DNA from: Dicyema japonicum
Taxonomy: Eukaryota > Animalia > Dicyemida
NCBI GenBank assembly: GCA_011109175.1
Contig: RDEW01000029.1
Location: 158,158 to 222,157, forward strand
Direction: 5' to 3'
Length of the DNA: 64,000 nucleotides
Notes under the pieces: generated by a model
Told to the model about the DNA's origin: nothing
Databases searched by the model: none
Seen by the model: only the letters and a program-made list of their open reading frames with translations
In this document: in pieces, positions 61,400 to 62,917 of the stretch
Layout of the letters: every line of letters starts with the position of its first letter
Position numbering within the stretch: the first letter of the stretch is position 1
Program-made: the position numbers and the translations under genes

Positions 61400-62917
61400 A
61401 TGCCGCACGAAGTTGATTACCGTACTAATTAATGTTTATTCACTAACAGGCAGGAAATCCCGCAGTCCTAAACGTGAGAAAGTTCGACATCGTGAACGAA
61501 GTCGAGAAAGAGAACGTGAAAAACGTTCAGACAGAGATCGCGACCGCCGACATGGAAAATCTGACAAACCACGTGACAAACACCACTCCAATCGACAACG
61601 GACTCCTCCTCGCACGTAACCCTATTCCTCATTTTCAGATCCCTTCGCCGTCGTCCATATCAATATTGGGATGTTGCCCCTCCCGGATTTGAACACGTGA
61701 CTCCTGACCATTACAAGGCTATGCAGCGTACTTTTTCCTGTGACCCTAGAAATCGGGCAGGTCCCGTTGGAAGTGCCCGGAGGAGCTCCACTGTTGCCAG
61801 CCATCGCCTATACTGGGTCTACCATGAGTAGGCAAGCAAGAAGGATCTATGTTGGTGGGATCCCATTCAAAGCAACTGAAGACGAGCTTATGGACATGTT
61901 CAACAAGCAGATGAAGCTGAAAGGATACTCCCAGGCTGAGGGAAACCCAATCATCGCCGTTCAAATCAACGTGGAGAAGAATTATGCCTTCCTCGAGGTT
62001 CTACCACGTGTTACTTTAGTTTCGATCTTCTGAAGAGACCACAGCAGCTTTAGCCTTCGATGGAATAACTCTTAGAGGCCAACCACTGAAATTACGTCGC
62101 CCACGTGACTACGTCCCTCCGTATGGCAATGCTGATGGGGAAATGGGTACTTCTCATTTTGATAGGCAGATCCCCTCATGATTGGCGATTCTCCCAACAA
62201 AATATACGTCGGTGGTCTTCCTTCTTACTTGGGACAAGACCAGGTATATTTACCGTTTCATTATTTGTTTCCACGTGCTATTCGTGGACTTAATTACTAT
62301 CTGATAATTAGGTGAAAGAACTCCTCATTTCTTTCGGTCCCATAACCAGTTTTAACCTCGTGCTTGATGAGGCTGCTGACGTGGCCAAATGTTACTGTGT
62401 TTATGTGGACCCGGCATCCGTGGATAAGGTTTTCCGTGATTTTAAAGAAGGCCTGTGCGGGACTGAATGGGATGACTTTGGGAGATAAGACGTTAGTAGC
62501 TCAGAGAGTCTCTGGAGGACTGAGACCGGCCATTACAGCCCTAATTCCCCAACTTCCTGGTACGGGAGCTGCTGTGGGATCTGAACCGCCAACAGAGGTT
62601 CTGTGTTTGATGAATATGGTCACTATTGAGGATCTTGTAGATGATGATGACTTCCAAGGTTATTGAGTTGTCAAATTTTAGACATTTTTGAGGACGTACA
62701 GCAGGAGTGTTCAAAGTTTGGAGAAGTAAAGTCTATGGAGATCCCCCGACCTAGTATGGCTACACACGTGCCTGGTGTAGGGAAAATATACGTGGAGTTT
62801 GACTCGATTACGTCTTCTCAGAAGGCTCAGTTGCACCTTTCAGGTCGTAAATTCATGGATAGAGTCGTCGTCTCTTCGTTTTTTTCAGTGGGCAGATATC
62901 ATAATAGAGATTTCTGA
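61400..62917 (+). CDS. U2AF2: splicing factor U2AF large subunit (U2AF65)
   Basis: RS domain, [14 protein letters not shown] (ULM region), RRM1 ([17 protein letters not shown]), RRM2 ([18 protein letters not shown]) and UHM ([20 protein letters not shown]); short introns plus one of 68 nt. Confidence 0.95.

What the first reader, a model, noticed from the sequence alone, without database searches (positions are those of the whole stretch)
62312..62428. U2AF65 RRM2 has lost the RNP1 Ala-Phe: possible adaptation of the 3' splice-site reader to micro-introns
Seen: RRM2 reads [18 protein letters not shown] where the family has [20 protein letters not shown] (recalled human sequence). This is an in-frame two-residue loss removing A-F of RNP1, plus G-to-C, while RRM1 (KNYAFLEF), the ULM region and the UHM look intact. 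Established: that Phe (human F304) is one of the RRM2 aromatic residues contacting the polypyrimidine tract. Inference: with 20-29-nt introns there is no room for a two-RRM footprint, so RRM2 binding may be relaxed or lost, which would be a concrete spliceosomal change linked to intron miniaturisation.
Basis: partly seen in the sequence, partly recalled or inferred. Interest (0 to 1): 0.7.

Follow-up and report, generated by a model that had tools for sequence, protein, structure and literature searches.

The report
U2AF2 with a shortened RRM2 RNP1
The splicing factor that normally reads the pyrimidine tract before the 3' splice site has, in this tiny-intron animal, a real and so far unique two-residue loss in one RNA-binding motif. 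A related parasite with equally tiny introns keeps the normal motif, so the loss is a lineage quirk rather than a requirement of intron miniaturisation.

Summary
Window 61400-62917 (+) encodes an intact 428-aa U2AF65/U2AF2 orthologue with eight GT-AG introns, seven of them 22-28 nt. Exon 62312-62428 reads ...[14 protein letters not shown] against human U2AF65 structures and against a family profile places a two-residue gap at KGY[AF]CEY. A separately assembled contig from the same sample matches with no differences. None of 155 U2AF2 orthologues with a complete RRM2 segment has this gap; all have [KNM]G[YF][AGS]F.

The closest relative found is a second dicyemid U2AF2, on a contig in the Octopus sinensis assembly. 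It has only 25-30-nt introns, one of them purine-rich, yet keeps the canonical KGYSFCEY. The deletion is therefore not needed for micro-intron splicing. RRM2 is not decaying: K260, N289, D293, Q333, R334 and G338 equivalents are kept. Window-specific changes cluster in the beta2-beta3 loop and RNP1 (6 of 15 in 11 of 77 columns, P=0.005).

By inference, the Tyr of KCY may slide into the Phe304 slot, so loss of the stacking aromatic is unproven.

Not testable here: RNA evidence, a second paralogue, and a fold of the joined RRM2. The scan noted this same stretch once before (s1-371851).

The parts
61400..62917 (+). U2AF65/U2AF2 orthologue, 9 exons, 428 codons plus stop
   Evidence: The joined model is in frame with a single terminal stop. 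Only counts were computed; the joined sequence was not printed or sent to any tool. Every exon's best PDB hits are U2AF65.
61450..61615 (+). Arg/Ser/Asp/Glu-rich N-terminal (RS-like) region
   Evidence: Translation; aligned with the relative's RS region.
61658..61693 (+). [12 protein letters not shown], the U2AF35-binding Trp motif
   Evidence: 24/27 identical to L001 and 76% identical to the amphioxus U2AF2 P0054.
61977..61997 (+). RRM1 RNP1 KNYAFLE (the final Phe lies after the 22-nt intron, at 62020-62022)
   Evidence: 90 bits to human U2AF65 RRM1, aligned to KNFAFLE.
62199..62219 (+). RRM2 RNP2 KIYVGGL, preceded by the conserved linker end MIGDSPN
   Evidence: The K260 and D256 equivalents are kept and V254 is replaced by Ile.
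62244..62311 (+). 68-nt GT-AG intron, the outlier among eight introns (the others are 22-28 nt)
   Evidence: The orthologous intron in L001 is 26 nt.
62312..62428 (+). Exon encoding RRM2 alpha1-beta2-loop-beta3 (the finding)
62387..62404 (+). Shortened RNP1, K-C-Y-C-V-Y. The 6-nt deletion junction lies between 62395 and 62396.
   Evidence: DNA alignment with L001; HMMER gap placement.
62451..62658 (+). RRM2 alpha2-beta4 with C-terminal extension (QRVSGGLR), linker, and start of the UHM ([11 protein letters not shown])
62682..62917 (+). UHM (third, protein-binding RRM) with the RKF motif at 62846-62854; stop at 62915-62917
   Evidence: 82.7 bits to the human U2AF65 UHM; Pfam RRM_1 27 bits.

Best explanation
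This is the U2AF2 (U2AF65) gene of a dicyemid, most likely Dicyema japonicum. It carries a genuine, lineage-specific 6-bp in-frame deletion in the beta3 strand (RNP1) of RRM2. Several nearby radical substitutions accompany it: T296A, G297D, S299A, G301C and E306V in human numbering. The rest of the protein is intact and conserved, so the gene is functional. This covers the RS region, the U2AF35-binding motif, RRM1, the RRM2 framework with most of its RNA contacts, and the UHM. The likeliest reading is a tolerated remodelling of the RRM2 RNA face. Dicyemid introns of 22-30 nt have little or no pyrimidine tract, so selection on RRM2 is weaker than on RRM1. RRM2 reads the 5' half of the roughly 9-nt U2AF65 footprint. 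The change is permitted by micro-introns, not required by them. Mechanistically (inferred), the strand re-registers: the C-terminal half CVYVD keeps its place, the Tyr of KCY moves into the Phe304 stacking position, Lys moves into the Tyr302 position, and the beta2-beta3 loop becomes two residues shorter. That would give a weakened or re-specified RRM2 site, not an abolished one. The gene model, the deletion, its uniqueness, the canonical relative and the clustering of changes are shown. Relaxed constraint, the register shift and the effect on RNA binding are inferred.
For: Gene model and identity. Deletion and its exact position. It is present in a separately assembled contig at depth 26. Uniqueness: 155/155 orthologues have [KNM]G[YF][AGS]F, and the loop length is 8 in 152 of them; K, G, F and E of RNP1 are invariant in 15 diverse orthologues. 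The relative L001 has introns of 30, 28, 25, 26 and 25 nt and a canonical RNP1. After the split of the two dicyemids, at columns conserved in outgroups, RRM1 shows 0 (window) and 1 (L001) lineage-specific changes, against 15 and 9 in RRM2 (Fisher P 3e-5 and 0.018). Six of the 15 window-only changes fall in 11 of 77 columns around RNP1 (P=0.005). The K260, N289, D293, Q333, R334 and G338 equivalents are kept. Literature: F304 stacks on U4 and holds linker V254 (PMC4786784). F304A lowers poly-U affinity 73-fold, and RRM2 binds the 5' part of the tract (PMC3616741). In D. japonicum the 3' splice-site logo is reduced to AG and the Py tract is missing or very short (PMC13644364). Micro-introns are shared by dicyemid species (PMC6543705).
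Against: No RNA or cDNA evidence could be reached, so neither expression nor the splice junctions are shown. The only read support comes from the probable source sample. A second, canonical U2AF2 elsewhere in the genome cannot be excluded. The UHM shows as many lineage-specific changes (9 and 10) as RRM2, so 'RRM2 relaxed' may really be 'RRM1 unusually frozen'. Overall the window lineage is only modestly faster than L001 (35 against 25 changes). The register-shift model rests on residue pattern alone. Assigning L001 to a dicyemid is an inference from its micro-introns and its similarity to the window gene.
Confidence: 0.55

Rival explanations
1. Adaptive remodelling. With 20-29-nt introns there is no room for a two-RRM footprint, so RRM2's tract binding was selected to be lost or changed. 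U2AF then reads the 3' end with RRM1 plus U2AF35 only.
For: The deletion hits an invariant motif. Window-only changes cluster on the RNA face: RNP1, the beta2-beta3 loop, K329T and the C-terminal extension. The published logos show no pyrimidine tract. Human short introns with truncated tracts bypass U2AF65 through SPF45 (bioRxiv 10.1101/784868).
Against: The sister dicyemid, with 25-30-nt introns including a purine-rich one, keeps a canonical RNP1. Micro-introns predate the split of dicyemid species, so the change came later and is not required. Most RRM2 RNA contacts are retained. No test of positive selection is possible with two saturated sequences.
Confidence: 0.12
2. Functionally silent, compensated change. 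The strand re-registers, Tyr replaces Phe304, and RRM2 binds RNA essentially as before. On this reading the deletion is a neutral curiosity.
For: With the C-terminal register kept, the core-facing residues would be A, C, C, Y against G, A, C, Y in human, and the surface aromatic is kept as Tyr (sequence pattern). A divergent homologue, P0140, has Tyr at RNP1 position 5. The linker and other contact residues are kept.
Against: The invariant K300, G301 and E306 equivalents would all change, and the beta2-beta3 loop would shorten by two. In human that loop helps sandwich U6. No other orthologue of 155 tolerates any length change in the strand.
Confidence: 0.16
3. Divergent paralogue. The window gene is a second, derived U2AF2 copy, and a canonical copy (the orthologue of L001) does the main work.
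For: There is no conserved synteny around the two genes. The window copy has three extra introns and more lineage-specific changes.
Against: The gene is complete with all partner-binding motifs intact. All five L001 introns are at positions shared with the window gene. There is only one U2AF2 locus in the window. No other note of the scan on this genome mentions U2AF (weak evidence). The published genome is strongly reduced, at 5,012 genes (PMC6736024).
Confidence: 0.12
4. Artefact, or a rare allele or pseudogene copy in the sequenced sample.
For: All read support comes from one sample. Contigs drop minor variants.
Against: An independent assembler gives the same sequence at depth 26 with 0 differences. 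A run from a different study holds 69% of the stretch's sampled words. The reading frame is open over 428 codons across eight introns. The deletion is in frame and is accompanied by point changes.
Confidence: 0.05

Closest known systems
Human U2AF65 (U2AF2) RRM1-RRM2-UHM (PDB 5EV1-4, 2G4B, 2YH1, 1O0P)
   Same: The architecture is the same: RS region, U2AF35-binding Trp motif, two RRMs and a UHM. RRM1 scores 90 bits and the UHM 83 bits. The K260, N289, D293, Q333, R334 and G338 equivalents are kept.
   Different: RNP1 of RRM2 is two residues shorter, with G301C and E306V. The inter-RRM linker is 21 aa against 27. The protein is 428 aa, shorter than human U2AF65.
Second dicyemid U2AF2 (L001, contig VCDQ01001777.1 of the Octopus sinensis assembly GCA_006345805.1)
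   Same: It shares micro-introns at five common positions and many derived residues (for example DP.SVDKAC and [10 protein letters not shown]). Identity is 74-89% in the ULM and RRM1.
   Different: It has a canonical KGYSFCEY, three fewer introns, and a 26-nt intron where the window has 68 nt. RRM2 is only 58-61% identical.
SPF45/RBM17-dependent splicing of human short introns with truncated pyrimidine tracts (bioRxiv 10.1101/784868)
   Same: It is a precedent that short introns without room for a tract escape U2AF65 RNA reading while still using UHM-ULM contacts.
   Different: In that case a different protein replaces U2AF65. Here U2AF65 itself is altered, and whether an SPF45 homologue exists in this genome was not tested.
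Yeast Mud2 (the U2AF65 homologue of S. cerevisiae)
   Same: From established knowledge, not tested here: it is a U2AF65 relative with degenerate RNA-binding RRMs, in an organism whose introns rely on a strong branch site rather than a tract. The window gene's first intron ends in CACTAACAG.
   Different: Mud2 lacks the RS domain and has diverged across both RRMs. The window protein is conserved throughout apart from one motif.

Membership tests
U2AF2 / U2AF65 orthologues | Best matches of every coding piece are U2AF65 rather than PUF60, RBM39 or SPF45 | tested here: met
   PDB searches with five exon pieces all rank U2AF65 first. For the UHM piece, SPF45 and PUF60 UHMs score 28-29 bits against 83 bits for U2AF65.
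U2AF2 / U2AF65 orthologues | N-terminal RS-type region followed by the U2AF35-binding Trp motif (xYWDVPPPGFE) | tested here: met
   The RS-like run is at 61450-61615 and [12 protein letters not shown] at 61658-61693.
U2AF2 / U2AF65 orthologues | RRM1 with canonical RNP2 and RNP1 | tested here: met
   RIYVGGI and KNYAFLEF align to human RLYVGNI and KNFAFLEF.
U2AF2 / U2AF65 orthologues | RRM2 with the canonical eight-residue RNP1 K-G-[YF]-[AGS]-F-x-E-[YFW] | tested here: not met
   K-C-Y-C-V-Y is two residues short, and the G and E equivalents are replaced. The canonical form is present in 155/155 sampled orthologues. This makes the gene a variant orthologue. The rest of RRM2 (RNP2, alpha helices, beta4) aligns normally.
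U2AF2 / U2AF65 orthologues | C-terminal UHM with acidic helix and R-X-F motif | tested here: met
   [16 protein letters not shown] and [10 protein letters not shown] are present; 82.7 bits to the human UHM.
U2AF2 / U2AF65 orthologues | Binds a pyrimidine tract and recruits U2 snRNP | not testable with these tools
   This needs binding and splicing assays.

The most novel reading that the evidence does not exclude
In this dicyemid lineage U2AF works as a 'one-and-a-half RRM' reader. RRM2 has lost uridine stacking and now serves mainly as a spacer or protein scaffold. The 3' end of a 22-nt intron would then be defined by RRM1 plus U2AF35 on about 4-5 nt and the AG. That would be a natural minimal 3' splice-site recognition module in an animal.
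Probability: 0.15. Interest if true: 0.6.

Novelty: new variant of a known kind. Interest (0 to 1): 0.36.

Why it matters
U2AF65 is an essential splicing factor. Its RRM2 RNP1 was the same length in all 155 orthologues sampled here, spanning animals, fungi and a plant, and its Phe was invariant. A natural length change there, in one of the two animal groups known to have introns under 30 nt, gives a paired natural experiment. Two related parasites have the same intron architecture, one with a canonical RRM2 and one with a shortened one. Comparing their RNA binding would show how much of the U2AF65 footprint is still used when there is no pyrimidine tract. As it stands this is a modest, lineage-specific variant with no functional data, and the sister lineage shows it is not the key to micro-intron splicing.

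Tried and rejected
(1) Word-index protein search with the RRM2 exon ORF: no candidates, so the database holds no fragment ORFs from this species.
(2) The same search with the relative's RRM2 ORF: it returned only host-type or ordinary animal U2AF2 fragments and no further dicyemid.
(3) Profile search with 15 orthologues: the 120 rows listed are all highly canonical animal, fungal or plant proteins. No myxozoan, orthonectid or ciliate sequence surfaced, so the comparison with other short-intron lineages could not be made.
(4) Laying runs: only two of the four runs laid, none is RNA, and run X5 from the independent study gave nothing.
(5) A window-wide ORF-joining scan for micro-introns was too noisy to give a length peak and was dropped. 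The intron statistics quoted rest on this gene and on the literature.
(6) tblastn of full-length orthologues across the micro-introns read through the introns and gave messy alignments. It was replaced by exon-by-exon alignment.
(7) An alternative splice model that would restore two residues was rejected. There is no intron at the site in either dicyemid, and both flanks align codon for codon.
(8) U12-type identity of the 68-nt intron was rejected, because its 5' end GTATATTT does not fit the [AG]TATCCTT consensus (from established knowledge).
(9) Synteny between the window and L001: none beyond the gene itself.

Full report
**Gene and model.** Three-frame translation of 61400-62950 and a splice model give one + strand gene from ATG 61400 to the stop at 62915-62917.
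- It has eight GT-AG introns: 61422-61449 (28 nt), 61616-61638 (23), 61728-61749 (22), 61998-62019 (22), 62147-62169 (23), 62244-62311 (68), 62429-62450 (22) and 62659-62681 (23).
- The joined model is in frame, with 428 codons and one terminal stop. Only the counts were computed; the joined sequence was never printed or sent to a tool.
- Searched exon by exon, every piece finds human U2AF65 first in the PDB: RRM1 90 bits, the RRM2 start, the RRM2 middle, the RRM2 end with the UHM start, and the UHM 82.7 bits. SPF45 and PUF60 UHMs score only 28-29 bits.
- The RS-like region, the U2AF35-binding [15 protein letters not shown]1 RNP1 KNYAFLE|F and the UHM RKF motif are all present.

**Organism.** The runs that hold the stretch are coded, but they date from 2019 and 2017. 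GC is 38%, the window has scaffold gaps, and the introns are 22-23 nt in an animal gene. All of this fits Dicyema japonicum, whose genome paper reports 36.7% GC and very short introns (PMC6736024). PMC13644364 names D. japonicum as the only non-myxozoan animal with such introns. The assignment is an inference.

**The observation.**
- Exon 62312-62428 reads ...[26 protein letters not shown].
- phmmer against human RRM2 chains puts a two-residue gap at KGY[af]CEYVD.
- A profile I built from about 30 orthologue segments puts the gap in the same place. It scores the window segment at 40.9 bits and the relative's segment at 74.5 bits.
- In DNA the gap is exactly six bases between 62395 and 62396. 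It is flanked by sequence identical to the relative: TTAC [TCCTTT] TGTG.
- A Logan contig of run X1 (2032 nt, depth 26) covers 61406-62950 with no differences or gaps. This rules out an artefact of the genome assembler, but the run comes from the probable source sample.
- No RNA run was available.

**How unusual it is.**
- The representative search with the RRM1 exon gave 740 hits, and a later profile search added 120 named orthologues from animals, fungi and a plant.
- Of 155 proteins with a complete RRM2 segment, all read [KNM]-G-[YF]-[AGS]-F. The beta2-beta3 spacer is 8 residues in 152 of them, and none has the gap (alignment).
- In an alignment of 15 diverse orthologues (38-64% identical), K, G, F and E of RNP1 are invariant. 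The window keeps only K by sequence alignment.
- The nearest natural oddity is a divergent homologue, P0140, with KGHVYCEY. It has the full length and Tyr at position 5.

**The key relative.**
- The top hit, P0001 (74% identical), is an ORF on contig VCDQ01001777.1 of GCA_006345805.1. That assembly is Octopus sinensis (bioRxiv 10.1101/2023.05.16.540928).
- The locus (L001) holds a complete U2AF2 gene of 438 codons. Its five introns are 30, 28, 25, 26 and 25 nt, all at positions shared with the window gene.
- It shares many derived residues with the window gene. Identity is 89% in the ULM, 74-83% in RRM1, 58-61% in RRM2 and 62% in the UHM.
- Octopus genes do not have such introns, and dicyemids live in cephalopod kidneys. 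This is therefore almost certainly a dicyemid contig inside the host assembly (inference).
- Its RRM2 reads ...DLATGISKGYSFCEYMDPTSVDKAC, a canonical RNP1. One of its introns (5365-5389) is purine-rich and has no pyrimidine tract at all.
- Micro-introns are common to dicyemid species (PMC6543705). The intron architecture therefore came first, and the deletion arose later in one lineage.

**Pattern of change.** I used nine outgroup animals and considered only columns on which at least seven of them agree.
- RRM1 has 0 window-only and 1 L001-only change in 73 columns.
- RRM2 has 15 window-only and 9 L001-only changes in 77 columns (Fisher P 3e-5 and 0.018).
- The UHM has 9 and 10.
- Since the two dicyemids split, RRM1 has been frozen while RRM2 and the UHM have drifted.
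- Six of the 15 window-only RRM2 changes lie in 11 columns (296-306) around the loop and RNP1 (hypergeometric P=0.005). The deleted position 303 also lies there but counts as changed in both lineages.
- Other window-only changes are at RNA-facing positions: F262Y, K329T and V337G/A339L/K340R.
- L001's own changes are conservative (mean BLOSUM62 +0.4 against -0.2 for the window).
- The K260, N289, D293, Q333, R334 and G338 equivalents are kept. So is the linker end MIGDSPNK; in human, V254, D256 and K260 there build the U4/U5 sites.
- RRM2 is therefore not a decaying domain. Its RNA face has been locally remodelled.

**What the literature supports.**
- F304 stacks on the fourth uridine and holds linker V254 (PMC4786784).
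- F304A lowers poly-U affinity 73-fold. RRM2 binds the 5' half of an 8-9-nt site and is the more uridine-specific RRM (PMC3616741).
- In D. japonicum the 3' splice-site logo is reduced to AG and the tract is 'missing or extremely short' (PMC13644364). That paper reports conserved U2AF1 and U2AF2 in myxozoans and says nothing about this deletion.
- Human short introns with truncated tracts use SPF45 instead of U2AF65 (bioRxiv 10.1101/784868).

**Structural caveat (inference).** Both flanks of the gap have the family's lengths, so by sequence the gap sits inside the strand. A strand cannot contain a gap, so one side must slide.
- If the C-terminal half keeps its register, the core-facing residues become A, C, C, Y (human G, A, C, Y). 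The Tyr of KCY then lies in the Phe304 position and Lys in the Tyr302 position, and the beta2-beta3 loop is two residues shorter.
- The other option would put Asp in the slot of the core Tyr307.
- I therefore favour the first at roughly 2:1. On that reading, 'loss of the stacking aromatic' is not established.
- What would be lost is the K300/G301 geometry, the position-3 aromatic and loop length. In human that loop helps sandwich U6.
- This needs a fold of the joined RRM2, which I left out because the spliced model has no reference.

**Verdict.**
- The proposed link to micro-introns holds only in the weak sense that a missing tract may relax constraint on RRM2. It fails as a requirement, because the sister lineage with the same introns is canonical.
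- Expression, a possible canonical paralogue, and other short-intron lineages (myxozoans, ciliates, the orthonectid) could not be tested here.
- The scan had noted the same stretch once before (s1-371851).

Noticed in passing
L001 (contig VCDQ01001777.1 of GCA_006345805.1), gene at 4640-6090: A 482-kb contig in the public Octopus sinensis assembly carries a U2AF2 gene with 25-30-nt introns that is 74-89% identical to the window's in the ULM and RRM1. It looks like dicyemid parasite DNA assembled into the host genome, and so a source of a second dicyemid genome.
   Followed up: partly
window 61616-61638, 61998-62019, 62429-62450: Three micro-introns of the window gene are absent from the L001 orthologue, while all five L001 introns are shared. 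This points to intron gain or loss between dicyemid lineages in a highly conserved gene.
   Followed up: partly
window 62244-62311: This intron is 68 nt, whereas the gene's seven others are 22-28 nt and the orthologous intron in L001 is 26 nt. It contains a CCACGTG. Its 5' end does not fit a U12-type intron.
   Followed up: no
whole window; 61570, 61694, 62005, 62102, 62272, 62765: The palindrome CACGTG occurs 40 times in 64 kb, against about 8 expected from base composition. Six copies lie inside the U2AF2 gene, two of them in introns. A run spaced 48 nt apart lies at 15690-15882.
   Followed up: no
window 61422-61449: The first intron ends in CACTAACAG, a yeast-like branch-site consensus directly abutting the 3' AG, with no room for any tract.
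   Followed up: no
window 63820-63984 (+): An NAD kinase exon (Pfam NAD_kinase, 44 bits, GGDGT motif) lies just downstream of U2AF2. Between the two genes, 63451-63651 is an ORF with no Pfam match that contains an N at about 63654.
   Followed up: partly
window 61750-62146 versus 62170-62560: Since the two dicyemids split, RRM1 has had 0-1 lineage-specific changes at conserved columns, while RRM2 and the UHM have had 9-15 each. RRM1 seems to be the part of U2AF65 that dicyemids cannot change.
   Followed up: partly
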